Below, in pieces: positions 1-64,000 of a DNA stretch of 64,000 nt. This DNA is from Mytilus californianus (Eukaryota). The number at the start of each line of letters is the position of its first letter. Position 1 is the first letter of the stretch. Below the pieces are notes generated by a model. That model did not search any database. It had not been told where the DNA came from and worked only from the letters and a program-made list of their open reading frames with translations. The stretch is from contig NW_026262690.1 in assembly GCF_021869535.1 (NCBI RefSeq), forward strand, positions 7,564,001 to 7,628,000, in the 5' to 3' direction. Both the position numbers and the translations under genes were made by a program.

Positions 1-1314
1 TTCGTAGAGTTATTTTCGACATTCAATTTGATTTGTTCTCTCCGCGGTTTTCTTGTTTGAGAATTTACTCGCCTTGCGGAGCCATTCTCATGGTTCCTGT
101 ATTGACCGTTTTCATTGCCGCCTTGCTTTCGTAGCCTACATTCTCGCTTAAAATGTCCATATTTACCGCAGTTGTAACATTGCTGATTTCTTTTTTCGGA
201 TCAGCAGAGTTCCTTTGTCCACTCTTTTTGAATTTATTTAACTCCATTCGAAGTGATTCTAATTGCTTAGTAATCAAGTCCATCATTTCTGTAAATTTAT
301 CGTCCTTAGATACCTCTTGTGTACTAGTATCAACATGCGTAGCCCGCATTTGAGGTTTTACAAAATCTTGTCTTTTCTCTGCTTTGTAGAACGCCTTAAG
401 CTCTACAGCTAAAGAGATTGCTTGGTTTAAGTTTTGCGGTCTGGATTGTTTAATTTTTATCCTCATCTCACTATCGTGCAATGCATCTAAGAAATAATCC
501 TTTGATAATGTTTCTTTGACTTCAATGGGTGCTAGTTGGTATGCACTGTTTACTAATCGCCGTATAGTTTGTCCTAGTTCTGGCAAGGTTTCACATGCGC
601 GCTGGCGTCTCTCCTTCAACTGAACTCTGTATAGTTCGTTCTAATTTGGAGGAGCAAAACGCTCTTCTAATGATTTCACTCAGGTCTCATAATTCATTTT
701 CTTATCAGTTAGTAAATCGCTGAAGACGCTCTGTGCGTGCCCGCGAAGGGCAGCGGCAAGGTAAAGCCCCTTTTCATATTCGTCCCAATTATTGATGATA
801 GCACATGCATCAAAGTGCGATTTAAAATCAACCCATTCGCCAGACCCATCATAATTGGCAAGTTTGATTTCACTCCTTGTATTTTTTCCTGGCGTGTGTA
901 CTTTTTCCTGGTTATTGACAACATGTCTTGAATTTCTTTTGTTACATCTTAAGATAGGAGAAATCTCCACTGAACCTCCGCTACTGGTACAGGGTGCGGC
1001 GCTAGTTGTGTTGTATTGCACTTGCTTAGAACGGATTCCCGGGTGTTGCTCACTTATGTAAGTTCCAAACAATGTTGGAGCATCATCAGCTCGTTGAAGC
1101 TGTGTTTGGACTGTGCGCTCTGTGACATCGCCAAAATCCGAGCGCCTCGTCTAAACAATACCAGAATCCGTCAGGTTTCTAGGTTTCTAGGTTGCTCTTT
1201 TGGGGTAGAGTGATATGGTGTCAAAAGCCAAGGGTTTTGAGTTTGTCTCAACTTCTCCCTACTTTGCTTAACCTCTTCCTCTAGCGTACTTATATGCTGT
1301 TGTTAATCATCCAT
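1..1314 (-). pseudogene. Ty3/Gypsy gag, degenerate (element G1, runs off the window start)
   Basis: ORFs 680..1072 and 65..619 are in one frame, separated by two in-frame stops (NYET*VKSLEERFAPPN*NELYRVQLKERRQ). Gag motifs YDGSGEWVDFKSHF and GLYLAAALRG. A CCHC knuckle CYNCGKYGHFKREC lies in a shifted frame near 147-188. Clearly homologous to the gag in ORF 30102..32423. Confidence 0.9.
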
Positions 1315-1344
1315 ATTTATTCAATTATCGGTACACTTACCAAT

Positions 1345-1362
1345 ATCCCACCACTGCCACCA
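1345..1362 (-). promoter_or_regulatory. Primer-binding site of G1, complementary to the 3' end of tRNA-Leu
   Basis: Minus strand TGGTGGCAGTGGTGGGAT, 6 nt after the LTR end (..GTGACA). The plus strand reads ATCCCACCACTGCCACCA, the 3' end of a tRNA-Leu plus CCA. Confidence 0.85.
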
Positions 1363-1368
1363 AAATTA

Positions 1369-2240
1369 TGTCACGTACTCGGTGTAGTGACTTATGGGTA
1401 TTGGATATTGGAATATGCACCGTTTCTTATATATCTATCTTAGACTTGTTAATTTGGCCTCTGTCATCCACTAGCCATGTGTGGGACGTGTTGTTGTCTT
1501 TGCACAGTCCTTATGTGTCCAGCAACAACCAGTGCTAACCTGTGCACTATTACAACTTGTATTCTACCTATGTACTACTATCCAATGCACTGCTATTCTG
1601 TGCACTTTCTGGTCTGTTCCGCTTGTGCACTGCTTAACCAGTGCACTCTCTGGTTTATGCTTTACTTGTGCACTTGTTTACCTGTGCACTACAACCGCAC
1701 AGTCGCCTATGCACCTATTACCCGGTGCGTATGTTTTACTTATAATATCCTCCTGCAACCTTATTCAGGTACGCAGATAAGATTCTTATTCAGAATCTAT
1801 TTAATCTTTTATAAATGAAATAATTACCTTCTTGCTTCTTCTAGACGTCTTGACTATTAGTTAAGCAATCCTTATTCTGACAGCGCATCAGGTTTTATAC
1901 TAGGTTTTAGACCATACCATTTACATTGGACGATACCAAATATCTTATTCCTATGAGTGTTTATAGAATACCTAACCATTATTGCTAAAACGTTTGAATG
2001 ACGGCCCTTATTTTTACAATTACCGATCGGAATATTTCCGGGTTTGCTAACCACAACCTGTCCGTTTCTGATTCTAACTATTATAAATTTCCATAGCAAT
2101 GCATAAACAAAACAAAACCGAAAGTAGACAAACGTTCAATTTTCAAACTAAACGAGTTCGTGTAACAATGTTTTAACTTGATAAAAGTAATAATCAGTTG
2201 AACCCTTGTAAAATAAAACAGGTGAACTATTTTCATCACA
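1369..2240 (-). mobile_element. 5' LTR of Gypsy G1 (872 bp)
   Basis: TG..CA termini, followed by the PBS and gag. Similar along its whole length to 58838..59709. The outer flank begins TGAG (2241-2244). Confidence 0.9.
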
Positions 2241-2640
2241 TGAGTGCCAATGAGACAACTCTCCATCCAAGTCAAAATTTATAAACCATTATAGGTCAAA
2301 GTACTGTCTTCAACACGGAGCCTTGGCTCACAACGAACAGCAAGCTATAAAGGGCCCCAAAAATTACTAGTGTAAAACCATTCAAACGGGAAAACCAACG
2401 GTCTAATCTATATAAAAAACGAGAAACGAGAAACACTTATGAACCACATCAACAAACGACAACTACTGAACATCAGATTCCTGACTTAGGACAGGTGCAA
2501 ACAATTGCAGCGGGTTTAAACGTTTTAATGGTACTAAACCTTCACCTTTATCTGAAACAATAGTGTAACATTACAACATAGAAAAACACACTATAAAATA
2601 TCAATTGAAATAGCTTAACTCAATCAAAAGACATATTAAC
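2241..2640 (+). repeat. Interspersed non-coding repeat; right half of the element into which G1 inserted
   Basis: Begins TGAGTGCCAATGAGACAACTCTCC. Uninterrupted reverse-complement versions of the motif ATGTGGTATGA(T/G)TGCCAA occur near 2995-3012 and 3205-3222. The right boundary is approximate. Confidence 0.55.
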
Positions 2641-4577
2641 ACCAGTGAATATACACTGAACAAATAATTTGATCTATGATACAATGCAAATACAAAATAA
2701 ATAAACTAAGGGAAGAATAATTAAAGTAACATGTTTTACCGCTGTAAAATGTTAAACAATTTAAGAAAAACAATATACTTGAACAAAAATATCAGCCATC
2801 TGCAATTACTTTAAACACAGGTTAATAAAAATAATTTTGTTGTGTATACATCAGGCCGTTGGTTTTCTCGTTTGAATTGTTTACAATTTGTTATTTCAAA
2901 ACCTCTGTATTCATAGCTGTCCGGTATAGGTTTAGAACATTTTTGAAGGTTATAAGGTGACATGTATTTGCTACGACATTTGGTATCTGCCTAGTTGGCA
3001 ATCATACCACATCCTTTTTTTTTTTTATATAAAGCAGTTTACAATAAAAATATAACTACTTCAATCTAAAACCAACAGGATTTCTTTTGATATAACAATG
3101 ACAAAAAAGAAAGAGAGAAAAAAATTAGTACTGAAGTATCCACTCTATTTTTTTGTACATGTTTAGTATAACATCCACTTCATTTGGAACTCTGAGTTGT
3201 CTTATTGGCAATCATACCACATTTCCTTATTTTTATATTAATTATATGTATATAATCTTTTATCAGATTCATATATCATTAATATATATTATTATCATTA
3301 TCATGATTAGGGAGGGAATACCTTATGAATCCAGGAAGTATTTCACAACGGGCTTCATTCGAGGTCATTGATTTATGATCCCCAAACTTTTTGGGGATGA
3401 GTCGGATGTTGTTGGCTGGTACTGTCCAATATTTGTGGTAAGTCTCTTTATTCTTTTTTATGTATTATTTATAGATTCCTAATTAGAAACCAATCCCACT
3501 TGATTTCTTACTAAATACCTTGCTTCTAGGCGGTGTCATCCGAGACACTATCCCTCTGATCATTGGCATTGTCACAATACATCCTGTACTGGATATAGCA
3601 GCTGAAATGAAATTATTTCATTCAGTACAAGCTAATAGAGAGATACAGAAAATGAAATAAAACTATGTATAAAAAATAATATATCGACAGATACATCAAA
3701 TGACCATGTTTTTATTTTTATTTTAAAAAGATATTAACACAATAGATAGTCACAATTATATAATCTAAATTATGATTCTGAGCCATTTTCTTCCTTATTT
3801 AATCATATATAACAGAGAGAACGTTTTAAAGTGCTGATTTGAAAGTTAAGCACGCGTTTGATTTACATTTTTAGTTTGCCCTAAAACAAATCCTGATCTG
3901 AATAATCTGAAACCAATTATTTATGTACTTAGTAGTATTTCAACGTACCTATATACATCATTAGATTTGTCTTAGCCAGTCCTTGTATAATTAATGCTGC
4001 TGTGGTGGTTATACATCCAACAAGAGATATAACCTCATCTATAGTACAGGCCTGTAATATTATTATCAAAATTACTCCTCCAATGTTCCAGAAAATAATT
4101 CTTATCCCATCTTAATCTCATGGTGTATTGTCCAACTGTAATAGAGTTCCAACAGAAAGGAGCGCTGATAAAATACAAACTATCCACACTCGACCTGCTT
4201 AAAATAGTCAGTGCCGACATTGAGAATGTAATTATGAGAACAACGAACACCCATCGCTTTCCGAATGGAGAGAAATTACTTCTATAACAGTCGAATACTC
4301 TCTGCATGTTTTGGAGAATTGAAACATTTGATCGTCTTCGTGATATTGGCATTGTTTCTTGTACCATGGTTAGTACACATAGAAATGGGATAATTGCTAT
4401 AATGACTGCTATAAACTGGGGATAATGATACCCATTAGTCCATGTGATCAAATATCCTGACAAAAGAGAGGCTCCAATAGCCCCCAATCCAACTCCACCG
4501 TCAAGAAGACTTATAATGAGAGAACGACCTTTTCCAGGTGTCGTTGTGTCAGCAACGAAGCAAAATGACATTGAAAG

Positions 4578-7500
4578 AGGGACGATAGATACCAGAGGGA
4601 CAGTCAAACTCATAGATCGAAAACAAACTGACAACGCCATGGCCAAAAATAAAAAGACAAACAGACAAATAATAGTACAGATGACACAACATAGAAAACT
4701 AAAGACTAAGCAAAACGAACCCCACCAAAAACTGGGGGTGATCTCAGGTGCTCCGGAAGGGTAAACAGATCCTGCTCCACATGTGACTCCCGTCGTGTTG
4801 ATTATGTTATTACAAATCCGGTAAATAGTCTAATTTGGTAAGTCACATTCGTGAAAAGGGAAGGGTATTGTAGTTATGACATAAGGAACATATCCGATAT
4901 CATCTGTGAAACGGTTATTCCATAACGGTCAACCAACTCGTGATGGCGTCCGTAAAATTTACGAAGGGATGATTTCAACTTCACCATTTGGAACTCTTGG
5001 CTTACTAGCTTCCTTGTGAGCAGCAATCCTCTATCAAGGAAATCATGATAGGAAACACAAGCCCGGGAATATCGTATCAATTGGGAGATATATATTCCGT
5101 ATGCAGGCGCTGCTGGAATGTTGCTACATAGAAATGGAAAGTTCACAATTGGGAAGCTGAAATCATCTCTTTTGTCGTAAAGTTTTGTTTTCAACCGACC
5201 CTCATTTTCAATTTTTAGATGTAAGTCAAGATATGGGGCAGACTTAACTGTATCTGTAGTATCCTTTATCTCTAGTTCGATGGGATAGATTCGTTCAACA
5301 TAGTCACCAAATTTTGCATTATTTAGTGAGAAAACATCATCTATATAGCGGAACGTAGAGTTAAATGATATTGCTTACTTCTTATCTTTCTTCCTAAGAA
5401 GTTCCTGTATGAAGTCAGCCTCATAATAATAAAGAAACAAGTCGGCAAGAAGAGGGGCACAATTGGTTCCCATCGGAATTCCGACAGTCTGTTGAAAAAC
5501 ACGTCCTCCAAACGTAACAAATATGTTGTCAATCAAGAAATCAAGCATCTTGATAATGTCAGTTTCAGAGAATTTTTTGTTTGAATCAGAGTGATTCTTT
5601 ACAAAGTAGGATTTATCCCTCCACAAGACAAGATACTTGTATCTACGTTCGCCATTCTTTTTAATGAAACAAAGTAATACCAACTCTTTCAATTTGTCTT
5701 TTAGTTTGGAATGGGGAATACTTGTGTAAAGGTGTAATACCACCATTGATTTTCCCCTATTAGTCTTTGTTAAATTTGCACCTTCAAAAAATTGTGCAGA
5801 ATTTATCTTTGTTTCAAATAAAGAAATATGGCATGAGTAAAGTTTTATCCAGTCCAGTACTATAGAAAAAATTTCACATAACATTTCATTGCATATAAGA
5901 AAATAACCATCACTGGAAGTAAACCAATCAAATTTTCCCCCTTTTTTAACCTGTGTACAAGCTTTAGTAACCATGTAACCTCAAGTTTCCAAAATATTCT
6001 ATAGAAACCCCAAATAAAAAAATAATGGTGCTTTGAAATACCCAAGATATATGTTTATGACCCAGAAATGTTTTACTGCAATTAAGTGTAGGATCAATTA
6101 CCTACAACTGTCAAATTCAAGGGAATATTTTTTTTCGACCTATTTTCGTATGCAACCGGATGTGACGTACTATGATTTGGTGGTATTACACCTAAAGTGT
6201 TGAAAAGTCAAATGTTTTAATACTATTGCAAGATGAGAGAGTCTTAGATTGTATGTACTCTAAAAGATCTTTGGAATTTTTTAGTATCCACATCTGATTC
6301 ACGCCACCTCTAGAATAGGCAGTTTCACAATAACTTTGGAGCCCGGCTTTGATTGCTGTTAAAATAGATGTTAATAATTTAGAAAGAGGTTTCGTGGAGC
6401 ACTTGGAAGACTCAGCAATATACCGTTGTTTGTAAGGACACTTATGTAGTTTAGGTATCCAATCCAGTTTATGTAATGATATTTACACACAAAAACGATG
6501 TTGTTTGGGGCTTTATCTGCGGGGACAACAACATATTTGTCATGGAGGTAGGACAAATGTTTTGCAACATTTGGGTCTTTAAAAATTGATGTAGCGTGGG
6601 TATTGATATGCCCATTTAGTTTCTTAATTCGGATTTGTATCAACGACCTCACAGCCTTAATCCATTCGGAAAGAGTATCTACGTCTTCTTTCTCGCGTTT
6701 AGCCCATTGCCTGGCATAATCCTCGAATGAATCCATCAGTATTTTGAAGTTGTATTTCCAATTGATTGATTTAGACTCACGATATTTCGGACCTTTGGTT
6801 AACAAATTTCGCAGGGAAGTGTTATTGACAATGTTGAGGTCTCCGGTAATAACGCGGCCAGCCGGATTATATGTGAATTGGGAACTAGCACAGGTGCAAT
6901 CAGGAGGTTTAGACTTGAAGTCGTCAATGTTGAGATCCTGCAAAACGTGTTTGTAATTGAAAATTTTAGTTGCAATTGGTTTGATATAGGTATAAGAAAT
7001 TATTGGTACAGACTGATCTTTAAAATAAGGAGGTATTTTCGACTGAACTAATTTATGATGAAGGATATTGCCTAAGTTGACGCCATCGAGACCTTTGATG
7101 GCAAAGGAAAGTTTAAGAAAAGATCTTTTCTCTTTTTCATCTTTTCCAATGCGAACTGGTTTGAAAAGTCTGTGACTTGCAATATCCGAAATGATAGCTG
7201 TAAGTTTGTATTGGTTTGAATGAGGGTTTGTAACAGTGGTTTCCAAACATAAATTGAACAGAGAATGAAGTTTTGAAAGTTTCGTGCGAATGTGATGAAT
7301 ACCTAACGGCTTTTGTATAAATGGCAGCAAGTCATTTATAGAGACATCATGCAAAGTAGGTGATGTATAATGACGATGACCATGACTGCGTCTACGTCGA
7401 GGAGTAGAGTTGAAAATATTCATCACATTCACCGGGCTACAGGAAGGACTAGATAGAATACCTATACCATCAATTTTGTCATTGCAACCATATGGTGTCG

Positions 7501-7627
7501 CAGTTCCCAATTGTCGAATCCAGTAGTCTTCTTTTTGTCTACGGAGAGGCGTTGCAAGTTGAAGATTGCTAGTCTTGTGGTATATTTTTTCAATTATACG
7601 AACTGTCATAGAAACGATGGAATGATC
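4578..7627 (-). mobile_element. Penelope-like retroelement of the Naiad type (N-terminal GIY-YIG, CxC linker, RT), 5'-truncated and degenerate, inserted in exon 1 of copy A
   Basis: GIY-YIG tail RRQKEDYWIRQLGTATPYGCND; CxC (KPPDCTCAS); ADKAPNNIVFVCK; motif A TFDFSTLYT; GIPMGTNCAPLLADLFL; RYIDDVFSL; thumb TKLYDKRDDFSFPIVNFPF. AAAG is duplicated at 4574-4577 and 7628-7631. Removing the insert restores host codons A-A-T-L-S-M. Confidence 0.85.
5731..6192. mobile_element. Non-autonomous DNA transposon (Kolobok-like MITE) nested in the Naiad RT
   Basis: TIR GGTGTAATACCACCA / TGGTGGTATTACACC with TAAA duplicated on both sides. Excision restores the RT codons S-T-L-Y-T-S. GG..CC termini with a 4-bp AT-rich TSD are Kolobok-like. 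Confidence 0.8.
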
Positions 7628-9879
7628 AAAGTGTAGCAGCCCATGTACCAGTGCACGCTTCAATCATATAAAAGATAAACATCTGTCTCACATTCATTTT
7701 ATAATACATTCATACCGCACACAAAATATTCTTTATTATCGTCCCAGCTAAAGGTACAATAAAGAATAGTTTTCTACCATGAACATCACTATATGCAGCA
7801 AGATTTATATTTATCAACACACTAGGAATAATGAACGCAAGATATGTATATATGGACCATTTGGTTGAAATTTTTTGTTTACTGGATTCTATGAAGTATG
7901 CAATTGAGGATTTATTTACATTACACGATGAAAGACTTCCGCTCAGTGAATGTGGGACGCCGGGATACTTCTCTTCCAAGAAATAAACATAAGTATATTG
8001 TCCAACCACATATAAACTTAAAATGTACGACAGCATATGTAGGAATGGTATGCTAATTATAATGGAAATGGTCAGCCATCTGGGATATCTAAGTTTATAA
8101 TAATATCTTCACAGTTTTCTTTATTTACCAATAATGGTGTCTCCTCGGATCGATCATAGGCTACCTTGGGTGTCATACGAGTCCTGATAAAAAAAATCAA
8201 TAAATAAATAAACAAATAGTTCATTAAAAAAATTATCTTTATTTGAATGAAATTGAAATTCATCGATTAGTCTCTGAAGTGCATAATGGTCCAGCTATTT
8301 GTGAAAAGGCTGTCAGACTTCAGAGCAATCAACGGACCCAGCAAGTCATAAAAAGGCCATCACATGTCAGAGCAAACTCACGACTATTTATCATTTTGAG
8401 TAAAAAAGATAGACAAGTTAGTTGAAATGTAACCAAATCTAAAATCTTTTTGTTTTCAATATGAGTAAAAGGAGAGTATGCTTCATATACGTAAATGAGA
8501 CGGCAACAAATCATCCCTCATCATCTAAATACGAATTAAATAGTAATTATCAGAGATCTGCCATTAATAGTATTAAAGTTCTCCAAATAAAAAGACTCCA
8601 ACAAACCCATTACGCAATGACATGATAAAAGCCAACCCGACGAAGTTTCTGACTTGGAACACAGTGACAGTGCGGGACAGACACATGTGGTGGATTAAAC
8701 TAGGATTTTTGCGTATCTTTAGGTATAGAACCACTAATTCGGACCCGGTCTGAAAGAACTTACTAGAAAGTAGGATTAAAGTATTAAATATAAAATTTAA
8801 ACAAATTTTAGATACTTCCTACGAATTGCTGTAACTTTGTCAACAAGTAAGATATTTGGGTAATTTTAGTATGAAATGAATTCAAAGCTTAAGGACTTGA
8901 AATCAATGTAGAACCATTGTTGAAAGTGTTTTTTTTTATTAATAAACATTAAAATAGGAGGGCATATTTGCCCTGTTGTTCAGATAAGAGGTACCTGTTT
9001 TTGTGCCACCAAACTTCTGGGAACCAGTGCGCTCTAATATGTAATTGAAATAGCAGACTTTAACATAGCAATGGGGCTTTGAATTAGTGGTTTTATTCCT
9101 ATAATCCTCAATAAGTGGCCATACTCCAGAACAAACATGAACGAATAATATTGAAACCGGTATCGCTAATTTCATAAGGTTATGTCTACCATTCAAACGA
9201 GAAAGGTTTTTAAACTCAAATATACTAGTACGATTTATAACAATATAATTTAAAAAGATTAAATATGCAATAACCGACTCCTCCGTAAAACCCACCAAAA
9301 AACAACAACAACACACAAACACACACTCACATTCACAGTCTGTACGATAAACTTTTGAATCCACAGCCACATTTAATATAAATATGATAATTGCATAATT
9401 TATAAGCCTTTTTTCATTTGTTTGTTTATGTTTGTTTTTAAGCCATTGGCCCATATGGGCGTAACGTGCTTTTCATTAAAGTATTAAATATAATAAAGTG
9501 AAATAGATCTAAAATATCATTATCTTAAACAAAGAGATGACTGAAAAGTAATTTGAATTGGTGTCAGCTTTAATACTGAAAACTGAAAATTTAATTCAGA
9601 TTATCGCATAAAGATAAACGTTCATGGTATATAAAGGTTTAGACTCTTTCTGGCCTTTTATTATTTAGAAATGAGTGATATGTTTTGTTATTTTTTATGC
9701 ACTTGTCTCGAGTAAAAGTTGACTGCGTTTTTATTTTAAATACATAAATATATATAAAAATTAAAAATACACATTTAATACTTCATTTATTAGTTCGAAG
9801 CTCATCTTAATATACTAATTTTCCATCACAGTTACTACAGACAGTATACATTTGCCAGCCCAGTACCATGACTTCAGTT

Positions 9880-10266
9880 ACTACAAACTATATTTACCGT
9901 TACGATAACACAGGTTAAACTTGACGGTCTAATTAATGCAAGCAAAATTAACCGATATAATAACTGTAACTTCAGACTATAATTACCATTATAGTAACTG
10001 CGGACTCTATTTACGTTACAGTTACTGCAGACTATATTTACCGTTACAGTAACTACAAACTTTATTTAACGTTACAGTGACTGCAGACATATACCGTTAC
10101 AGTAACTGCAGACTATATTTACCGTTACAGTAACTGCAGACTTTATTTACCGTTACAGTAACTGCAGACTATATTTACCGTTACAGTAACTGCAAACTTT
10201 GTTTACCGTTACAGTAACTTCAGACTATATTTACCGTAGCAGTTACTGCAGACTATATTTACCGTT
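9880..10266. repeat. ~27-bp tandem minisatellite
   Basis: Repeated unit TTACCGTTACAGTAACTGCAGACTATAT, at least 8 recognisable copies, no spacers. Confidence 0.9.
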
Positions 10267-10509
10267 ATTATATACTTACTGTTAAATGCAGGTATATTGT
10301 ATGTGTAATACAATCAATGCCAATCGTGCTGTATCAACCATCCGTGATGATATCGATATCAGTCACGGTTACAAAAGCTTTATCAAACCCCTAATCTGTA
10401 TGACGTCACGTCATCAATATCAGTTACGGTTGTAAAGGCTTTATCAAACCCCTAATCTGTATTGCTTGAGAAAAAAAAACATGTACTAGAGGTATATAAT
10501 AAAGTGTAT

Positions 10510-10639
10510 ATGATATGGTTTTTTTCAATATCTCTTCCCGTATCAACCCTCAACCAATATAATCCCTCGAGCAGAGCTCTTGGGATTATAGTGGTGTCTT
10601 GGGTTGATACGGGTGTGATATTGAAAAAAACCATATCAT
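10510..10639. repeat. Long imperfect palindrome (hairpin)
   Basis: ATGATATGGTTTTTTTCAATATC..CCCGTATCAACCC..TATAATCCC pairs with GGGATTATA..GGGTTGATACGGG..GATATTGAAAAAAACCATATCAT around the loop TCGAGCAGAGCTCTT. Confidence 0.85.
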
Positions 10640-48750: not shown

Positions 48751-48774
48751 CTGAAGAGACATTAATTGTCGAAA
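48751..48774 (+). ncRNA. Minimal hammerhead-ribozyme-like core (second local copy)
   Basis: CTGAAGAGACATTAATTGTCGAAA; the carrying element starts immediately after a (TA)n run. Confidence 0.5.
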
Positions 48775-52167: not shown

Positions 52168-52199
52168 CCTACTTACTTACTTACTTACTTACTTACTTA
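52168..52199. repeat. (CTTA)n microsatellite
   Basis: About 8 CTTA units. Confidence 0.95.
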
Positions 52200-53181
52200 T
52201 TTCTTTGAACGAGATTAAGAGGAACAAGGTTGGAATTTAAACAAAGCGTGTTAGTGAAGCCCGTCACATGTTTATGTCTTCTCAAGCATAAGGAACCTCG
52301 TCAGTGCTTAATCTTTATCAAGTGAGATTGAGACCATACGATCAGAAAGCCCATAACGACTGTCGACATCAAACAATAAAGGACATGGACATTACAACCA
52401 TAACCATCAAGAATCACAGGCCCGTATCCAGGCTGTTTCTGAGGGAACAACAACCTCAGAGAAAAAGTGTGAAACAGTTCAAACGAGAAAATTTACGGCC
52501 TAATTTATAACAATACAATTTACGAAAAACAATCATGAACCAACGACAACAAATGAATTACAGGCTCCTGAGTAGGGCAGGCATATAAAGAATTTTGCGG
52601 GGTTAAACATGTTTGTGAACACTCAATGGTGAGACAGTGATGTAACATAAAACATAAGAACAAAGTTTAAAAATCAGTTGCAAAAGTCTTAAAAATTGTC
52701 ACGAAGCACAACAACTAACATAAAAACAATAACGCACCGATATAAAAATTCTCGCAGTTACTGAAAGCCAGTTCAAAAACCAATTACAACAAATAAAATA
52801 TCATGTCCTCACAGACTTAAGTATCAGTCATTACACATCAAACGGATTCAGTGTAAAGGCGTCATAAAAACGAATGAATTTGTGCAGGACAATCTAGAGC
52901 TCGTTATATGATTTTGACGGTTGTTCAAAGTGAGTGCCATTTAATAATTTCTGGGTATATCTATTTTGGTGATTGTTTATTGTTGTGTTGCTGTCTCATG
53001 TCGGTTTATCTAGCATTTTATTTGATTTATAAGTAAATATAAGAATACGGATATTTTGTATGATCGGCAATAGAAAAGAGCCTATTTTACTAAATTACAA
53101 ATGATCTAGTTTAAAAAAAATAACATGAAAAGCGTATAACACGAAAGGGCTGCAATAATTTGGAGGTGGTTTTATACTTAC

Positions 53182-53338
53182 AATGACAGAATGATGCCAA
53201 CACCGCCAATTCCAGCCCATATTAAGAATGTAAGTCCTCTATAGATAGTTACTGTGGAATCGTATATTATACCAATAACCACTGTACCAAATAAACTGGA
53301 AAACGATTCTACAGCAGCCACTCCAGCAAAAATAGATC
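53182..53338 (-). CDS. SLC46A-like: SLC46-like exon 3 (157 bp) of copy D, intact
   Basis: TTTCAG| GSIFAGVAAVESFSSLFGTVVIGNIYDSTVTIYRGLTFLIWAGIGGVGIILS |GTAAGT. Same length and phases as exon 3 of copy B. Confidence 0.88.
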
Positions 53339-53817
53339 CTGAAATTTATTGCAATAATTATTAATCAATGAATACATATCTAAGTAAGTTTTTAAATTTG
53401 AAAATGACTAAATATATTGTATTTATGATTCTGATCCATGTTGATATCATTAGGCTACGTTTTATTTATTAGGCTTTATTTTGACATAGTATTTTCTAGA
53501 CATAACTTTCCTAATATGTATTGTATATGATTAAATCTCCACGACTGTCTTTGTAACCAAAAACCAATGTTCTCAAGTTAGGAGATATAGGGTATACACC
53601 AATGAAACAGCATCAGGTCATTGTGGACTTTGAACTAGTTATATTTTGGTATTCATCCGCTGTAGACTTTATTTTCCTTTTTCGTGACTCTCAGACTTTA
53701 TATTATTATATACTAGTAAAGAAACTGTTATATAGACTGTTTTTTACCATAACAACCAAAGACATTATATTTGAGGACATTTTTTCTATACAAAATTAGG
53801 GTATTTTTTCTATGACC

Positions 53818-56800
53818 TTGGATTATGGGTCCGTGTTACACTTATCAATTCAAAATTTCAAAAAGTTTTCAAATTTTAGTTTTTTGGATTTATGATCAAA
53901 GTTTTAAAATATAAAAATTCCAAATATTTTTATTTTTTTTTAAATTTTAAAAATTTACCAAATAATTAAAATTTTAAAATTATAAACTTCGTTTTAAAAT
54001 TTAATAGTTAAGATATTTAAGCAAAGCAAACTTTAAGAATACTAAACTGAACGTACAGTTTTGATCATTTCGCGTTTTGAAAGTTTGAATTTTTTGATTT
54101 TTGATTTAAATATAGGAAAGGGGGAAAGGACTAAAAAGTGGATACCTGTTACAAGTGCGAAACGGAATAAGAATAGAAGGAACGAAATGAAATTTCACAT
54201 TTTCTTTAAAAAAAACCCGGCCCATTTGTTAAAAAACTAAGACGTTTTAAAATTTGCATTCGAAAAACCAGGACAATGTAAAACGCTGAATTTTAAGTGG
54301 AATTCAAGGACATAGTTTTTGTCTTAAATATGAATAGTATTCAGAATATCATGGACAGTCATGAATTAAACCATTATACTTGCGAAATAGTAAGGGGGAC
54401 AAAACAAAACAAAACAAACGCAAACGAAACGAAACGAACGAAATGATTAATTACCAATCAAGGTAAAAAATAAAACAAGAGGCAGAAAGGCATCAAAGCG
54501 GAGAAAATTGAATAAAACAAATAAATATATCTAAAGAGCGGAGAAAAAAAAGAAAGAACCACTTTGATTATGGTCATTCTTAAGTCGGAATAAAAAGAAC
54601 AAAAAGAGATGAATCATTTTCAATTACAAAAACAATATTTAAGGAAGAGGCTTTATTTCTTTAAACAAATCGGACATCATATGATATATCAGTATCCTGA
54701 AATTTTCAAGGTAGCTATTTAAAAAAAAAAACACAATTCCCGAACCTATTTCAAACTCAATCAAACAGGTAAACTTTACCTACAATAAAAAATTTCTAAC
54801 AGAAGCTAAGCATTTCAGATAATTTATTTGGAACTATTTGGTTATCACAATCAATCAAAAGATAACAGAGAATTTCGAATTTATTGGTCGTAATAGACAA
54901 ATGGTATTCTAGATTGGATAGTCTACTCCCATTTAACAATTGTGTTTGTCCTACACTTTTGCCCAAACGTCACTTGCTTGATAAAGCGCCCATCAATTTA
55001 GGAGAACAGTGAAAACTGACCAACTCGCAGTAAGTCGAATAATATGGTAAGATTGAGTATGTAAATATATATGTTAAGCAATACTTATTCAACCAAAATG
55101 GTTAAATAAACGTGAATTCCCTCAAATTTGAAGTCAGATTTTTTATCTTGCTTTTCGGCTTCTTACTATCTGCATCCATATCGGCTGATAAAATCATTGA
55201 ACGTACATTTTGAACGATCATCTTCTTTTATCGATTTCATGACGATCATATATTGCCTATTATTATTGTTTTCAAGTCCAAGTATTGTTACGGTGGCTGA
55301 AATACCGAATCAGTGGTGTCGTAAGGAACGTCGCCTCAAATGTGGAATGTTGTGGATTGGATTTTTTTAAGTATCTGCTTTACACTGCTTACCCGCTATA
55401 CATGCTGTCTATAAGATTTAGACCAATTATTAGAAGTTTGGAGCCAGGATAATGCTAAGAGGTAGACCATTTATATCAAACTCAGCGTGATAGTCTTCTG
55501 AAAGTTTGAATTCATACCACATAAACATATCACATAAACAATTCAATCTGCATATCCATGTAATAGTTGCCGCTGTACATAACATTATATCCATATGAGC
55601 TGTGGGCATTTTGATAAATGCGTGATCTCAGTTTTAATTACGTGAGCAACACCATGCAATAGTAATGATAATGAAATATTTGTTTGTGTATGTGATGTTT
55701 TCTCTCTCTTGGAAAGGCTTGCATATACCTAGCCTGTTGCCCAGTTCAATTTAATATATTTTGAAAAAGAAAACACATTGTTAAACAAAACCGCAATTTA
55801 AATGATATAATGTTTTATAAGGTCACATCACCGATTAACATTTTAGTAAGTTGAAGTGACCATTTTTAATGGTAAATTAATTTGGTTGATTTTTGTCATA
55901 TATACTTTTCCTTTATTGATTTAGCATAAGTTTGGTCGTTGGTTGTCTTATTTTATTATGTCATGTAAAGCGATAGGTAAAGTGACGGGCTGAGATATTG
56001 TATTTTCGAGTGATATTGAATGCGATCAGATCGATTAACTGCTATTTCGCAAGTATAAATTAATGATTTATTCATGACTGTTCATCTTATTCTGACTGCT
56101 ATACATATTTAAGGCAAAAACTCTTTCCTTGAAATTAACTTAAAATTCAGAGTTTAACATTGTCCTGGTTTTTCAAGAGCAACATTGAAAACGTCCTGGT
56201 TTTTTTTTTAACAAAGTAGGCCGGTTTTTTTTTGTTTTTTTTTTTTAAGAAAACGTGAGTACGAAAGAAGGCATTTTTCGATTTAATGTTAATTTTCTGT
56301 ACTTATACTGAAAATATTTTACAATCACCTTGCAGTATTAAGATATATAAGAATTCTGTGGGTGCTTTTTAAAACAGTCTTTAGAACCGAGTACAGGGGA
56401 CTCATAATCTTTTCAATTCTATCTCATACTACCTTTGTTTTTTTACAGTCAATGATATTTTATGATTGATAAATATTACAGTGGTGAACTCCTGAGTTTA
56501 AAAAAAAAACAGAAAGAAAACTAGGGAATAGCAGTGAAAAATCAGAAAAATTTAATATAAACATAAAATATTCTACTAAAAGAGAACTCTCCGCAAAACA
56601 TAAAATTACAATAACAGAAACCTTAATCTGCCCATGTACTATTTCCCATTGACAATAACATTTGAATTGAATGGAATATCCAATAAAAAATTAAAACAAC
56701 ACTTGACTGCATGCGTCCGAAGCGCTTTTCTGTATTTACCTACATCCGGAACACTCAAAGCTGAATATTTGAAAGCCAAGAATATATTAGAACCGACACA

Positions 56801-58666
56801 ATTGAAGAGGTGTATGGCCTAAAGAAACATTAAAAATAGCAAAAAATCCATCTAAGTTCAACTTAGCCTGAGGGAGTTGAAACCTAGGATTCTTTATAAT
56901 TTATATATAAATGGCCTATTTTAAATGATTGATTATTGGTTGCTAAACGTCCAGTTGCAAATATTTCATGCATGTTCAGGATGATTACAAATTAACAATA
57001 AATACAATAGGTAGGTCCTGTAATAGAGTCCGTTCAGGATGAAAGTCGGCAAAATTTAGATCGCCACTGGAAAATTAGGGTATTGTGGATAGGGACAGAA
57101 ATTTTGACTGGCAAAATGTAAAATAACAAAAATACCGAACTCAGAGGAAAATTCTAAACGGAAAGTCCCAAAGCAAATGGCAAAATCAAAAGCTCAATCA
57201 CATCAAACGAATGGATAACAACTGTCATATTTCTGACTTAGTACAGGCAATCAAAGAGTTGTTACAGGGGTCCTTAATGTGCAGAGAGCGTTGCACTCTC
57301 TTTACACCCCCATTCTGACTGGACGTAGCTGCGTACTTGTACTTTGCTCAAAGTTGGTTGTCGTACGATAACTTAAAAATGCGTAAATAACAAATACGGA
57401 ACTATCCCTTAATAAAAAAATCAAATACCCCGTTTCGTTTTATTCGCTATTTAAAAACAGATGCGGATTTAGGGGGTAGGGGGCCGCCCACCCCTAATGG
57501 AGCTACATATATGATAAATGCATATACTTTTATCAAGCATCAGTCCAAACGTTGGGTAACTATGGGCCCCACCTTTTCAAAATTCCTGGATCTGCACCTG
57601 AAAAATGTACCATTATTGAAGCCCCTCGTGGCGGTATCCAAGTCAAATATACAGATATATACTATTTATAACAACATTTAGAGCAGTAATCACAAAGTTG
57701 ACAAGTAATTTCTGCATATGGTTCATTTATTAAGACGATCATCGTGTGTCAAAATCAGGTCTTACTTATTAATTTTTCCGACTGAAAGAAACATATTTCT
57801 CATTTTCACGCTGTAGTTCAAACAAGTTAGCCTCTTGTTTTATATTATATTTAGTTTTAGAAAATATTGTTTTCGTTTTAATTTGTTTTGGTAAATTTCA
57901 TTTCGTTTCCTTACATTCTTATTCCGTTTCGCACTTGTAACAGGTATCCACGTTTTAGTCCTTTCTCCCTTATCTATATTCTAATCAAAAATTAAAAAAA
58001 AAGCAAACTTTCAAAAAGCAAAATGATCAAAACTGTACGTTCCGTTTAGTATTTTTAAAGTTTGCTTAAATATTTAAACTATTAAATTTTAAAGCGAAGT
58101 TTATAATTTTAAAATTTTAATTATTTGGTGAAATTTTCAAAATTAAAAAAAAAATAAAAAAATTGGAATTTTGATATTTTAAGGATGTTCGCTCCTCTAG
58201 TTTTTGTATTTTTGCCAGATATTCGGAATCCTCTGGTTTTATCCATGTAGTGCCATTAAACATTTTGCCCACTAACCCCTACTTTTCTTACCATCATTTT
58301 ATTACATATAGTTAAAAATGTCAGCTTTGAAAATCTTATAAAATCCTTGTTATTTTTTCATTGTTTTTGAAAGAAAAAAGGTGCCAATGTTAAATGTATG
58401 AAAAATCTAGAGAGAATTATTTCCCGCCAAATTTTCAATGGCTAATATCTCGAAAAATAGCACTGGACCCTTCATTTTTTTCTGCTTTTTTGTTTCTTTA
58501 TTTATATACTATCAATTTAAAACAGTCTTTTAAAAAGCTTGTTATTTTGAAACAGAGTAGCGAACATCCTTAAAACTTTGATCAAAAATCAAAAAATCTA
58601 AAATTTGAAAACTTTTTGAAATTTTGAATTGATAAGTGTTACACGGACCGTTATGACCCATAACCA
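53818..58666. mobile_element. Long inverted-repeat (foldback-like) element with secondary insertions in its right arm
   Basis: Left arm ~53818-54390 is the reverse complement of 56040-56260 plus 57895-58182 plus 58570-58666. No coding ORF was recognised in the centre. Confidence 0.7.
58183..58569. mobile_element. Kolobok-like MITE with TTAA TSD
   Basis: TTAA-GGATGTTCGCT..AGCGAACATCC-TTAA. The opposite arm of the host inverted repeat (~53895-53915) shows the empty site with a single TTAA. Confidence 0.88.
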
Positions 58667-58837
58667 AACTTTCTGTTTCCTCGACATTTTGACGTTAGAA
58701 TCTTGATAAAGTTGTGATTCATAAATGTGATCCGCGAAAAAGATATAATTTCAGGCTGTTTCACTGAGGTGAAAATCGGTTGAAATTTAGAATAAGCTCA
58801 TAAATCAGTTTGTAGATATAAGAAGATGTGGTATGAG

Positions 58838-59709
58838 TGTCAAGTACTCGGTGTAGTGACTTATGGGAATCGTACCAGAGTTTACCGCTGGATATTGGAA
58901 TATGCACCGTTTCTTATATATCTATCTTAAATTTATTAATTTAGCCTCTGTCATCCACTAGCAATGTGTGGGACGTGTTGTTGTCTTTGCACAGTCCTTA
59001 TGTGTCCAGCAACAACCAGTGCTAACCTGTGCACTATTACAACTTGTATTCTACCTATGTACTGCTATCCAATGCACTGCTATCCCGTGCACTTTCTGGT
59101 CTGTTCCGCCTGTGCACTGCTTTACCAGTGCACTCTCTGGTTTATGCTTTACTTGTGCACTATAACCGCACAGTCGCATATGCACCTATTACCCGGTGCG
59201 TATGTTTCACTTATAATATCCTCCTGCAACCTTATTCAGGTACGCAGATAGATTCTTATTCAGAATCTATTTAATCTTTTATAAATGAAATAATTACTTT
59301 CTTGCTTCTTCTAGACGTCTTGACTATTAATTAAGCAACCCTTATTCTGACAGCGCATCAGATTTTATACTAGGTTTTGGACCATATCATTTACATTGGA
59401 CGATACCAAATATCTTATTCCTATGAGTGTTTATAGAATACCCAACCCTTATTGCTTAAACGTTTGAATGACAGCCCTTATTTTACAACTACCGATCGGA
59501 ATATTTCCGGGTTTTCTAATCACAACTTGTCCGTTTCTGATTCTAACTATTATAAATTTCCATAGCAATGCATAAACAAAACAAAACCGAAAGTAGACAA
59601 ACGTTCAATTTTCAAACTAAACGAGTTCGTGTAACAATGTTTTAACTTGATCAAAGTAATAATCAGTTGAACCCTTGTAAAATAAAACAGGTTAACTATT
59701 TTCATCACA
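58838..59709 (-). mobile_element. 3' LTR of the G1-family Gypsy element (872 bp)
   Basis: Similar to 1369-2240; TG..CA ends; PPT-like GGAGGCGTGGGTAA at 59710-59723 (minus); outer flank ends in TGAG (58834-58837). Confidence 0.92.
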
Positions 59710-60472
59710 TTACCCACGCCTCCAGGAAATGCGTCCTCGCATTAATCGACATCAATTGAGCACATCTACATCAAGTGGACATTTTTCAGTCCCAAACTCT
59801 ATCCGGGTATTGCCTCAAGCCATGTCATTCAAAAACCTCAAATATGAATATCATGAAACAACTGCTACTTCTTCAGTAACTAACCACTAGAACAACTCGT
59901 AGATGTATGATCTACCCGACATGACAAGATTCCCACTCAATTATATACTATTGTCTTAACATTGGAGGAAACGTTTTATATGTGCATCAACTTAAATATA
60001 TCAACTTTATCCTAAGTACCCTTAAGTCGTTTTACGTCTTGATTTCAAATATGCATGCCGACAGATTTTTAAGCAATACATTTTTAACCATGAAAACCAA
60101 CAAACTAAATGATACTTTTGAAAACCACTGAAAACATCACAAAGCCAAAACCGGAATGAAATAATTTTGCCTAACAACCGGCCACTTATGGACCACTCAA
60201 AGAGCTTGTTGAGAGGGATCTTTAACGTGCACAAAGCGTGGTACTCCCTGAACACGGGACCTCGGATTTGACGTCCCCATCCGACGGACATACATTTTAA
60301 AATATACAACAAAATAACATTTTTAGTAGTGATTCCCTCACTTTTGATTACAAATTAAACTGTCTTTCCATCAAGACCTCTAAACACTTCTATAAGCGTC
60401 CCTATAACTTTCTTTTTATATACTAGTATTTATATACATGATAAGAATATATATACAACAATGAGATCCACA

Positions 60473-63400
60473 TTATCTAACAAAATCATGCAGCCATGCC
60501 GGCTGCTTGGTAACCCTGCGTGGACGCCCAGTGTAGTCTGACTCATCCCTTGAATCACTTTGAACAACAATGTTGTCCGCATTATCAGGCTCATCATTGG
60601 AAATTTCGGGCACCACACTTTCCAGCACAAAAGTATCATCTTGATTTTCGTTTTCATACATTTCTGTTTCTCCTCTCAGAAGTTGGCCCTTGCACAACCT
60701 CATTCTATCTACGTGTATAACCTGTGATCGACCACGCCTACCACAATTAATGAGATAATTAACATCCGAGTATTCTTTCAGTACCCGAAAAGGACCACGC
60801 CAGTAGGATGTAAATTTAGGAGAATGACCAGCTTTTCGAATTGGAAAGAATACATATACCTGGTCGCCTTTCTTAAATTTGCTCCAGTTTAACTGTTTGT
60901 CATAATACTTTTTCTGACGCAACATTTCCTGTCATACATGTTTTCTAACAAAGTGGTGAGCTTCTTCCATTCGTTCTTGAAGTTCCAACGCCCATTTGTT
61001 TTGTGGAATTTTCTTTAAATAATCAGGTACCTCGTACATAAGGTCCACAGGTGTAGCAACTTCGCGACCTAACATCATGCGATTAGGCGTACATCCTGTG
61101 GTCTCATGTTGAGCTGATCTATATGCCATCATAACGTAGGGCAGTAAGCAGTCCCAATTGGAATGGTGTTCATCAACATAAGCAGTCAACATTTTTGCCA
61201 ATGTGCCATTAAATCTCTCTACCATTCCGTCACACTGCGGATGATAGGGCGTGGTTCTAGTCTTGTCTATCTGTAGTAGCTGACACATTTCTTGAAATAA
61301 TTCGCTCTCAAATTGCGCGCCTTGGTCAGAGTGAACTACAGTAGGCACGCCGAAACGCGTGATAACCTCTGTTACTAATATATTGGCTACAGTAGACGCA
61401 AGCATGTTAGGCATTGGGAAGCTTTCAGTTCATTTGCTGTAATAATCGCTTATGACTAGAATATACTTTTGTCCTCTCTCGGTGTCGGGTAGTTCTCCCA
61501 ATATATCCATGTTGCAATCCTTTCCATTGGGTAACCCGATTTCTGCAGCTGCATAGGAGCCCTTTGTCGTTTATTCGGACCTATTCTTTTAGCACAGACT
61601 TCACAACCAGCTATATACGCTACTACGTCCTGTCGTAAACCAGGCCAATAGAACCTATCTTTGATTCTAGATAGTGTTTTCCTGATGCAAAGGTGGCCTG
61701 ACGTCTTGTTATCATGACACTGCGTAAGTATTCGACGTCTTTCTGTGAGGGGTACTATGACTCTACTCTTGTTGCTGTCTTTGTGTAATTTGCAAAGTAC
61801 TCCATTCTGAATTTTCAGATCATCAAACTGCGACCATAAGCTTTTAAGAACATAATTGTACTCTCCTAGATTTTTCAGGTTAGGCTTGTGTCCATCTTGT
61901 ACCCACTGTCTTACAATTTATATATTTTTGTCATTGTCTTGAAGATGTTTGAGTGATATTTCTGTGTCGTCTTTCATGTATCTTTCAAATTCATCGGACT
62001 TTGATGACACTGTATGTACAAGTTGTTGTGCCTTCCAATATGAGCTATATCCACACTGCCTACAAGGTATCCTACTTAACGCATCTGCGTTTCGGTGCTG
62101 ACTTCCTGGTCTGTGTTTTATTTTCATGTCATACGTACTCAACACCTCAAGCCATCTTGCTAATTGTCCTTCTGCGTTTTTGAAGTTTAACAACCATTGC
62201 AGATGAGCTGTGGTCGGTTCGAACGATGAATGTTCGGCCATACAGAAAATGACGAAAACTTTTGACAAAGTGTACCACTGATAAAAGTTCTTTTCTGGTG
62301 ACACAATACTTCCGTTCTGTGTTTGATAGGGTTCTGCTTCCAACAGCAATGACTCTCTCTTTCCATCAACTTCCTGTGATAGCACAGCTCCACTTCAGTA
62401 TATAGAATAAAGGGTCTAGAAAGGTCTGGATGAGCGAGAATGGGTGCTTTAGTTAGCTTTCCTTTCAAGGCTTCGAAAGCTTCCTGACATTCTTCTGTCC
62501 ATAAGAACTTCCGTCCTTTTTCGGTTAGTTGATGGAGACATTTAGCGATTTTTGCAAAATTTTCTATGTACCTCCGGTAATATCCACAAAGACCCAAGAA
62601 TGAACTTAGTTCGCTCGCATACATTGGAATGGGCCAATCTTTGATGCTCTTTAACTTTTCTTGATCCGTGGCTACCCCTTCTGCGGTAACGATATGCCCA
62701 AGAAAGTTAACTTTCTTTGCAAATAGTGTGCACTTTTTGGGCTTAAGCTTTAGGCCAGCCCCCTTCAGCCGATCAAAAACCGATCGAAGATTCTTCAGCA
62801 TCTCCTCAAAAGACTTTCCAACTACAATTATATCGTCCAGATAGACTAGACATATACTCCACTGTAGTCCCGCCAATACCCTTTCCATCAATCTTTCGAA
62901 GGTTGCTGGTGCGCAGGCCAGACCGAATGGCATCTGTCGAAATTGAAACAGTCCCCGTCGGGTGGCAGTTTTTGGGCGATCTTTCTCTTCCATTTCCACC
63001 TGCCAGTATCCCGAACACAGTTCTAAAGTAGAGAACCATTTATTTCCGGACAATTGCTCCAATGAGTCGTCAATGCAGGGTAATGGATATGCGTCTTTTA
63101 CTGTTAAATCGTTAACCTTGCGAAAATCAACGCAAAAGCGCGTAGTACCATCCTTTTTCTTTACCAGACGACCAGGGACCGTCAGCTGGTTCAATTACCC
63201 CGTGTTCCAGCATGTCATCGATATGCCTATCGACTTCCTCTCGCATTTAAATAGGTGTGTGGCGAGGCGGTTGTTTTACTTGTGCATTATTTCCTGTATT
63301 TATGTTGTGTCGCACCAAGCTAGTTCTACCTAAGTCCCTGTCGGATGCTGCAAAAAGATCTTTGTATTCATTTAGGAGATTTTCGACTCCTCGTTTTTGC

Positions 63401-64000
63401 TCCTGGCTAAGATTTCCGTTGCAAACACTCAGTAATTTTTGTAACTCAATACTCAGGTCCTGATCATTTTGTTTCACAGTAATATTTTTGTTGTCGCTTA
63501 TTACGTCCATGACAGGGCTTATATTTCCTACAATTGTCCCAGCTCTAATTATCTTCACTACATTCGATACATTCATAAAACGCAGCGGAACGGTTTCTGA
63601 AGCTTTCACTAAAGTTCTTGCCATTAAGGCGCTGTCCTTTGCTATGAATTTGTCACAGGGTTCAATGATTCCTAAGCCTACTTCATTCTTTGTTGACGGA
63701 TATTCGTTAATGTGACCTCGGACCAAAGCTTCTGTACCTGGCTGTATGCATGTATCTTCAACTACTAACACTCTATAACAACCAAGCTGTCCAGTGAAGT
63801 TCAGTGGTATCTTCTGGTTATGGCAAACCATATGTTCTTCTTGTAAATTAATCAGCCATCCATTTTCTCTTAGAAAATCTAAACCAATTATACCCTCTAT
63901 AGCAAGATCCGCTACTACTGCCTCTGATAGGTATTCCTTTTGTTCAATCCAAATGTGAAATTCTCCTTTTCCAACAACGTTTAGTTCAGTTCCGTTTGTT
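60473..64000 (-). pseudogene. Ty3/Gypsy pol (protease C-half, RT, RNase H, integrase), frameshifted; runs off the window end
   Basis: GIIGLDFL; FCVDFRKVN..MPFGL..VYLDDII; HRPGSQHRNADALSR; IN HHCC; HSDQGAQFES..GMVERFN; GPY/F-like YWRGPFRV; terminal KQPAWL. The order PR-RT-RH-IN is that of Gypsy. Confidence 0.93.

What the first reader, a model, noticed from the sequence alone, without database searches (positions are those of the whole stretch)
1..64000. The two ends of the window are the two halves of one Gypsy insertion in one split target site: a ~64-kb tandem unit or circular permutation
The left end has gag, PBS and the 5' LTR, with outer flank TGAG+TGCCAATGAGACAACTCTCC (2241-). The right end has the 3' LTR, PPT and pol, with outer flank AAGAAGATGTGGTA+TGAG (-58837). 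Joined, the flanks give ATGTGGTATGAGTGCCAA, the uninterrupted repeat motif seen at ~2995-3012 and ~3205-3222, with TGAG as a 4-bp TSD. The host gene fits too: copy A has exons 1-2 but no exon 3, while exon 3 at 53182-53338 lies on the same strand just beyond the other half of the element. The coding sequence is nearly continuous: position 1 is just past the gag knuckle and 64000 is mid-protease. By comparison with G2, only roughly 150-250 nt are missing. Inference: the window is about one unit of a ~64.1-64.3-kb tandem duplication of the whole transporter cluster, or a circular/rotated contig, or two haplotypes assembled in tandem. Independent insertion at the same base of a common repeat would imply target specificity.
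Basis: partly seen in the sequence, partly recalled or inferred. Interest (0 to 1): 0.75.

Follow-up and report, generated by a model that had tools for sequence, protein, structure and literature searches.

The report
Gypsy copied by 64-kb tandem duplication
The two half-retrotransposons at the window's ends are two copies of one old Gypsy insertion, copied along with a roughly 64-kb block of mussel transporter genes by an ordinary tandem duplication.

Summary
The window lies inside a 127-Mb scaffold (C110:7,564,001-7,628,000). The assembly statistics match the Mytilus californianus reference, xbMytCali1.

The 100 kb fetched on each side shows a three-unit tandem array.

The right-hand element is complete at window 58838-66399 (7,562 bp). 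It has TGAG on both sides.

The left-hand element (-1900..2240) is its paralogue. It shares the same right flank and has lost 5.4 kb: the 3' LTR, integrase, part of RNase H and 1.96 kb of host DNA.

Divergences order the events:
- Old units: 4-9%.
- The element's own LTR pair: 3.7%.
- The two copies of the element and their flanks: 0.5-1.0%.

The middle unit is a hybrid. It resembles the downstream unit up to about 17 kb and the upstream unit from about 25 kb on. This is what unequal crossing-over predicts.

A circular contig and independent site-specific insertion are both refuted. A haplotype artefact is unlikely, because the 264 kb is gapless in a HiFi assembly.

The result is ordinary biology.

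The parts
1..1368 (-). Internal part (gag with CCHC knuckle at 179..138, then the primer-binding region) of the LEFT, truncated Gypsy copy. That copy starts at window coordinate -1900, outside the window.
   Evidence: It aligns to 62286-65527 of the full copy with 0.96% substitutions.
1369..2240 (-). 5' LTR of the left copy (872 bp, TGT...ACA).
   Evidence: It shows 4 differences in 872 against the 5' LTR of the full copy (65528-66399) and 31 in 854 against the 3' LTR.
2241..2244 (.). TGAG target-site duplication, right-hand copy, as inherited by the left paralogue.
   Evidence: The flank at 66400 of the full copy is the same apart from two bases.
2245..2847 (+). Remainder of the roughly 630-bp abundant mussel repeat into which the Gypsy inserted. 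It is absent from the older paralogous junction at -66284.
2241..58837 (.). Middle tandem unit (U2), a hybrid. It resembles the downstream unit U3 at 2-17 kb (0.7-1.0% substitutions) and the upstream unit U1 from about 25 kb on (0.6-2.2%).
18000..28000 (.). Transition zone where U3-like and U1-like informative sites interleave. This is the region of the exchange.
   Evidence: Q:P site ratios are 62:3 at 3 kb, 34:20 at 20 kb, 4:23 at 25 kb and 6:83 at 34 kb.
22703..23246 (+). 544-bp high-copy transposable element private to U2, so inserted after the duplication.
   Evidence: About 40 scored copies at 96-98% identity, from 2,491 candidates.
29183..33275 (+). Young 4.1-kb LTR element private to U2. 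Its LTRs are 99.7% identical and its TSD is GTCT. U1 keeps the exact empty site.
4038..8096 (-). Exons 1 (8096-7662) and 2 (4646-4038) of a minus-strand MFS transporter gene. Its exon 3 lies upstream of the window at -5435..-5590, beyond the truncated Gypsy, so the Gypsy sits in intron 2.
53181..53336 (-). Exon 3 of the next copy of that MFS gene. Its exons 1-2 lie beyond the window at about 71.7-68.2 kb, and exon 2 there is mostly deleted.
56879..58837 (.). Host DNA present here but deleted, together with 58838-62285, from the upstream paralogue.
58814..58837 (+). First 24 bp of the abundant repeat, ending in the left TGAG target-site duplication (58834-58837).
58838..59709 (-). 3' LTR of the complete Gypsy copy (58838-66399).
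59710..64000 (-). Internal region of the complete copy: polypurine tract, integrase (60473-61414), RNase H and RT (62187-63194), and protease (63247-64101). The reading frame is broken into many open stretches across three frames.

Best explanation
One Ty3/Gypsy element inserted once, making a TGAG duplication, into the first 25 bp of a very abundant mussel repeat. That repeat lies in intron 2 of an MFS-transporter gene, inside an older tandem array of units of about 60 kb. Later, the two neighbouring old units (P upstream, Q downstream) mispaired and exchanged by unequal crossing-over. This created a third, hybrid unit: Q-like at its start and P-like at its end. It also copied the segment between the exchange points, with the Gypsy and the gene around it, giving a repeat distance of 64,159 bp. 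The 64,000-bp window is slightly shorter than that distance. It therefore starts inside one copy of the element and ends inside the next. After the duplication the upstream copy lost 5.4 kb, and the middle unit gained private TE insertions. Shown: the structure, the divergences and the hybrid pattern. Inferred: the mechanism (homologous unequal exchange) and that the assembly reflects the real chromosome.
For: - Location and flanks.
- The self-comparison of 264 kb shows collinear direct repeats at offsets of 58-64 kb, in two divergence layers.
- The complete element at 58838-66399 has TGAG on both sides.
- K2P distances: LTR pair 3.7%, paralogous 5' LTRs 0.46%, shared internal part 0.96%, flanks 0.6-1.05%. 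The copies were therefore made at the DNA level, long after insertion.
- Three-way informative sites switch from U2=U3 to U2=U1 across 18-28 kb, with no novel junction.
- The 544 bp at the apparent break is an ordinary high-copy TE.
- The older paralogous junction at -66284 lacks both the repeat and the Gypsy. This places the insertion after the old duplication.
- There is no N in the 264 kb. The assembly is HiFi/hifiasm with purge_dups and 0.9% duplicated BUSCOs (PMC9710001). The identification rests on total size and on the C143 length equalling the published scaffold N50 of 117,871,512.
- False duplications are mostly separated by gaps (PMC9516828).
Against:
- The copies differ by 0.5-2.2%. 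This is no more than the 2.73% heterozygosity reported for the sequenced individual, so divergence alone cannot separate paralogues from alleles.
- The exchange zone is diffuse, about 10 kb, rather than a single point. That needs later gene conversion or donor units not identical to today's U1 and U3.
- Divergence in the recent layer is uneven: 0.6% next to the element and about 2% farther away.
Confidence: 0.85

Rival explanations
1. False heterotype duplication. The true chromosome has two units (P-Gypsy-Q), and the assembler placed the two haplotypes of the Pb-Gypsy-Qa segment one after the other.
For: There are only two copies in the recent layer. Their 0.5-2.2% divergence lies within the 2.73% heterozygosity of the individual. 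Indels and private TE insertions also occur between mussel haplotypes. Reads could not be consulted.
Against: There is no gap in the 264 kb, whereas false duplications are most often separated by gaps (PMC9516828). P and Q are only about 89% identical where the false join would have to be, which is too divergent for a HiFi overlap. The P/Q switch is graded and patchy over about 10 kb, not sharp. The assembly went through purge_dups and has 0.9% duplicated BUSCOs.
Confidence: 0.1
2. The duplication is real but arose by a non-homologous or replicative route (end joining, template switching) rather than homologous unequal crossing-over.
For: The exchange point is not sharply defined. Divergence in the recent layer is uneven.
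Against: U2 is collinear with both neighbours across the whole transition zone. The only U2-specific piece there is a dispersed 544-bp TE, not junction filler. The breakpoints fall at homologous positions of P and Q, within 5 bp in U1 and 3 bp in U3.
Confidence: 0.05
3. Two independent insertions of the same family at the same base of a common repeat, meaning strict target specificity.
For: One other family member is a solo LTR at C110:123438085-123438966. It lies in the same 25-bp motif, 3 bp away and in the opposite orientation.
Against: The flanks are homologous for tens of kb on both sides. The two 5' LTRs differ at 4 sites, while each differs from the 3' LTR at 31. The other 13 independent insertions examined are in unrelated, mostly AT-rich sites.
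Confidence: 0.01
4. A circular or rotated contig whose two ends are one element.
For: None beyond the matching flanks.
Against: The window is at 7.56 Mb of a 126.9-Mb scaffold. Its flanks continue into further, non-identical units.
Confidence: 0

Closest known systems
Tandem segmental duplication / array expansion by unequal crossing-over (non-allelic homologous recombination) between older paralogous units
   Same: The units are direct and adjacent. There is a hybrid middle unit and no novel junction. A gene family (MFS transporters) is amplified, and a TE carried along serves as a passive marker.
   Different: The exchange zone is diffuse (about 10 kb of interleaved sites) rather than a single switch. 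Independent confirmation from reads or other individuals is missing.
Ty3/Gypsy LTR retrotransposons (Metaviridae-like elements of molluscs)
   Same: 872-bp LTRs with TG...CA ends, a 4-bp TSD, a gag CCHC knuckle, PR-RT-RH-IN order and a polypurine tract next to the 3' LTR.
   Different: This copy is old and degenerate. The frame is broken into at least 10 open stretches and the LTRs are 3.7% diverged. The family is small, about 15 independent insertions. The clade within Gypsy was not determined.
False heterotype duplications in assemblies (Ko et al. 2022, PMC9516828)
   Same: Two adjacent copies whose divergence is within the heterozygosity of the individual.
   Different: There is no assembly gap between the copies. 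The join would have to lie in sequence only about 89% identical. The mosaic is graded.

Membership tests
Ty3/Gypsy LTR retrotransposon | Two direct LTRs ending TG...CA, flanked by a 4-6 bp target-site duplication | tested here: met
   LTRs at 58838-59709 and 65528-66399, TGT...ACA, with TGAG on both sides. Other family members have 4-bp TSDs: ATAA, TATA, ATAC, TAGT, AATA.
Ty3/Gypsy LTR retrotransposon | Domain order gag(CCHC)-PR-RT-RNaseH-IN, with integrase after RT | tested here: met
   On the minus strand: CCHC 64338-64297, DTGA 64101, RVT_1 and RT_RNaseH_2 in 62187-63194, rve in 60932-61414, Integrase_p58_C in 60473-60925.
Ty3/Gypsy LTR retrotransposon | Primer-binding site next to the 5' LTR and polypurine tract next to the 3' LTR | tested here: inconclusive
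   A purine-rich GGAGGCGTGGG abuts the 3' LTR. A TGG-starting tract lies 6 nt inside the 5' LTR. No tRNA match was tested.
Tandem duplication by unequal crossing-over | Adjacent direct copies collinear over the whole unit, far beyond the TE | tested here: met
   collinear chains U2-U1 and U2-U3 over about 45 kb each.
Tandem duplication by unequal crossing-over | Hybrid unit: one part nearest to one parent unit, the rest nearest to the other, with no novel junction | tested here: met
   (informative-site ratios). (no junction filler).
Tandem duplication by unequal crossing-over | Both copies present at full depth in reads, or in independent individuals | not testable with these tools
False heterotype (haplotype) duplication | Assembly gap or unsupported join between the two copies | tested here: not met
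   0 N in 264 kb. The criterion comes from PMC9516828.
False heterotype (haplotype) duplication | Half read depth and single-copy k-mers on both copies | not testable with these tools
Site-specific LTR retrotransposon (target-specific family) | Most independent insertions lie at the same position of the same target sequence | tested here: not met
   2 of 15 independent insertions lie in the 25-bp motif, at positions 3 bp apart and in opposite orientation. The other 13 lie elsewhere.

The most novel reading that the evidence does not exclude
This small Gypsy family may have a real, though loose, preference for the terminal 25-bp motif (GATGTGGTATGAKTGCCAATGAGAC) of the 41,000-copy mussel repeat. 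Besides the insertion studied here, 1 of 14 other independent insertions lies in that motif, 3 bp away. The motif with +-5 bp covers about 0.03-0.1% of the genome, so about 0.004-0.014 such hits are expected by chance. This is one event and was looked for post hoc.
Probability: 0.15. Interest if true: 0.35.

Novelty: already known. Interest (0 to 1): 0.2.

Why it matters
The main value is as a check on method. A reader without tools correctly inferred a 64-kb tandem duplication, and its period to within 0.2 kb, from two half-elements and a split target site.

Biologically it gives a dated example of how a mussel MFS-transporter cluster grows:
- old tandem units (4-9% diverged);
- then a Gypsy insertion into an intron (LTRs 3.7% diverged);
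- then a recent unequal exchange (0.5-2%) that added a hybrid unit;
- then decay: a 5.4-kb deletion in one element copy, loss of exon 2 in one gene copy, and new TE insertions.

This is the expected mode of gene-family expansion in bivalves and does not change any open question. Annotators should note that the copies are no more diverged than alleles in this 2.7%-heterozygous individual. Copy number here should therefore be confirmed with reads before it is used in gene-family counts.

Tried and rejected
I did not resend it or trim it, and read laying was therefore not used. No read depth, spanning reads or other individuals were seen.
- I suspected that the U2-specific 0.6 kb at the apparent switch (22703-23315) was junction filler of a non-homologous duplication. 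It is a dispersed 544-bp TE with thousands of candidate copies at 96-98%.
- Circular or rotated contig: rejected.
- Independent site-specific insertion: rejected.
- The paper search for '175 scaffolds' found nothing. The assembly was identified instead from its size and a scaffold length.
- The search of earlier findings by words was blank, and one call had too many words.
- The clade of the Gypsy and the name of the abundant 630-bp repeat were not pursued.
Full report
**Location and material.** The window is G000:C110:7,564,001-7,628,000 on a 126.9-Mb scaffold of a 1,651,950,171-bp, 175-sequence genome. Earlier notes of this scan call the genome a (California) mussel. I checked this against the paper. 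The published Mytilus californianus primary assembly xbMytCali1 has 176 scaffolds, 1,651,966,901 bp and a scaffold N50 of 117,871,512 bp (PMC9710001). Contig C143 here is exactly 117,871,512 bp. The difference in total size is 16,730 bp and one sequence, which would fit the mitochondrial genome being left out; that last point is my inference and was not checked. The assembly was made from PacBio HiFi at 45x with hifiasm, purge_dups and SALSA. It has a contig N50 of 16.3 Mb, 324 gaps, 0.9% duplicated BUSCOs and 2.73% heterozygosity. I fetched 100 kb on each side of the window. Coordinates below are window coordinates, so negative values lie upstream and values above 64000 lie downstream.

**Check of the observation.**
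- On the minus strand, the left end carries gag, with the CCHC knuckle CYNCGKYGHFKREC at 179..138.
- The 5' LTR is at 1369-2240 and is followed by TGAG TGCCAATGAGACAACTCTCC.
- At the right end...AAGAAGATGTGGTA TGAG precedes the 3' LTR at 58838-59709. A purine-rich tract follows, then integrase, RNase H, RT and protease in Gypsy order. The protease DTGA is at 64101.
- The flanks joined with a single TGAG give GATGTGGTATGAGTGCCAATGAGAC. This 25-mer, with G or T at position 13, occurs 41,084 times in the genome against 0 for the reversed control. The target is therefore the start of a very abundant repeat, and the 4-bp duplication is exact.
Its 52-aa peptide recurs at 100% identity in the upstream units. 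It also matches the third exon of the other MFS genes of the array.

**What the flanks show.** A self-comparison of the 264 kb and chained pairwise alignments show three tandem units, plus the tail of a fourth upstream.
- U1 runs from about -60.7 kb to -1.9 kb.
- U2 is 2241-58837.
- U3 runs from 66400 to about 107.2 kb.

The complete Gypsy occupies 58838-66399 (7,562 bp) between U2 and U3, with TGAG on both sides. The element at the window's left end sits between U1 and U2 and has the same right flank. Region -1900..4157 aligns to 62286..68316 at 98.65%, an offset of 64,186. From LTR end to LTR end the period is 64,159 bp. Window base 1 corresponds to about 64187, so 186 nt separate the two ends.

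Upstream, -7780..-1897 repeats 50997-56878 at 99.2%. The equivalent of 56879-62285 is missing. The upstream copy has lost 1.96 kb of host DNA, the 3' LTR, integrase and part of RNase H. The junction is ...GGGAGTT/ATG/TTCTGGTG..., with an AGTT microhomology and a few unmatched bases. So the two window ends are not two halves of one physical element. They are parts of two paralogous copies of one ancestral insertion, and one of those copies is truncated.

**Order of events.**

| Comparison | K2P distance |
|---|---|
| The two LTRs of the complete element | 3.7% (31 differences in 854 sites, plus 4 indels) |
| The two paralogous 5' LTRs | 0.46% (4 in 872) |
| Shared internal part of the element | 0.96% |
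| Flanks | 0.6-1.05% |

Each 5' LTR differs from the 3' LTR at 31 sites, so nearly all LTR divergence predates the copying.

The older layer of the array is 4-9% diverged. At the older paralogous junction (-66284) the sequence runs straight from ...AAGCTCATAAATCAGTTTGT into the equivalent of window ~2848. Neither the roughly 630-bp abundant repeat nor the Gypsy is present there. The order is therefore:
1. Old tandem units form.
2. The abundant repeat inserts.
3. The Gypsy inserts into its first 25 bp.
4. The recent duplication occurs.
5. The 5.4-kb deletion occurs in the upstream copy, and private insertions land in U2.

The private insertions are a 544-bp high-copy TE at 22703-23246 and a young 4.1-kb LTR element at 29183-33275. 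The latter has TSD GTCT, and U1 keeps its exact empty site.

**Mechanism.** I used U2 positions aligned to both neighbours and classed sites where U1 and U3 differ.
- U2 agrees with U3 at 2-17 kb, with ratios such as 62:3, 53:4, 70:5 and 43:1.
- The two classes interleave at 18-28 kb (34:20, 30:20, 17:13).
- U2 agrees with U1 from 25 kb on (4:23, 8:37, 6:58, 6:83, 1:27).

A middle unit that starts like the downstream unit and ends like the upstream unit is the product expected from unequal crossing-over between two misaligned older units. U2 is collinear with both neighbours throughout. The only U2-specific piece near the switch is a dispersed TE. There is thus no non-homologous junction. The diffuse switch and the uneven divergence of the recent layer (0.6% next to the element, about 2% farther out) suggest later gene conversion. 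Alternatively, the donor units may not have been identical to today's U1 and U3. This part is inference.

**Rivals.**
- A circular or rotated contig is excluded by the location.
- Independent insertion at the same base is excluded by the tens of kb of flanking homology and by the LTR pattern.
- A false haplotype duplication cannot be fully excluded.

Three things weigh against the haplotype artefact. There is no N in the 264 kb, whereas false duplications are most often separated by gaps (PMC9516828). A false join would have to connect sequences only about 89% identical. The parental signal changes gradually and patchily, not abruptly. I put the artefact at about 10%.

**Target specificity.** I examined the outer flanks of the other members of this small LTR family. 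Fifteen independent insertions have at least one readable outer flank, counting the one studied here. The TSDs are 4 bp: ATAA, TATA, ATAC (twice), TAGT, AATA and a few decayed ones. The sites are mostly AT-rich and unrelated to each other.

One solo LTR, at C110:123438085-123438966, lies in the same 25-bp repeat motif. Its TSD is ATAC, which reads GTAT in our orientation. It is 3 bp from our site and in the opposite orientation. The motif with +-5 bp covers roughly 0.03-0.1% of the genome, so about 0.004-0.014 such hits are expected among 14 insertions. This is a hint of a loose preference, based on one event.

**Comparison with the known, and verdict.** The element meets the defining features of a Ty3/Gypsy LTR retrotransposon: LTRs with TG...CA ends, a 4-bp TSD, CCHC gag and PR-RT-RH-IN order. 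It is old and degenerate. The locus is a textbook expansion of a tandem gene array by unequal exchange, with a retrotransposon as a passive, datable passenger. The phenomenon is ordinary.

Noticed in passing
G000:C35:21,922,226-22,043,925 (not in the window): The same LTR family appears as four LTR pairs spaced about 37-38.5 kb apart (21.922/21.929, 21.959/21.966, 21.997/22.005, 22.035/22.043 Mb). This looks like another tandem segmental array that carried a copy of this Gypsy along. The flanks of two of the copies share the same left flank.
   Followed up: partly
window 58814-58837 + 2241-2847, and genome-wide: The repeat hosting the Gypsy starts with a 25-mer present 41,084 times exactly in the 1.65-Gb genome, about one per 40 kb, equally on both strands. 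The family was not named or delimited.
   Followed up: partly
window coordinates 115898-141456 (L020 and neighbours, downstream of the window): A 25.5-kb satellite with a 50-bp period and about 93% identity between repeats lies just beyond the end of the tandem array.
   Followed up: no
window 29183-33275: A young 4.1-kb LTR element is private to the middle unit. Its LTRs are 757 bp and 99.7% identical, and its TSD is GTCT. The upstream unit preserves the exact empty site at about -29185.
   Followed up: partly
window 4158-4849 versus 68316/68317: The downstream unit lacks 692 bp that include most of exon 2 of the minus-strand MFS gene. Only residues 164-203 of that exon remain at 68316-68197, so that gene copy is probably a pseudogene.
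   Followed up: partly
window 40564-41568 (-) and 45635-46282 (-): ORFs with tyrosine-recombinase domains (Phage_integrase, Phage_int_SAM_1) suggest a DIRS/Crypton-like element. There is also an eEF1A C-terminal fragment, probably a processed pseudogene. Both lie inside the duplicated unit.
   Followed up: no
window 82398-89432 (downstream of the window): The downstream unit has about 7 kb with no counterpart in the middle unit, between the equivalents of 19043 and 19030. Its content was not examined.
   Followed up: no
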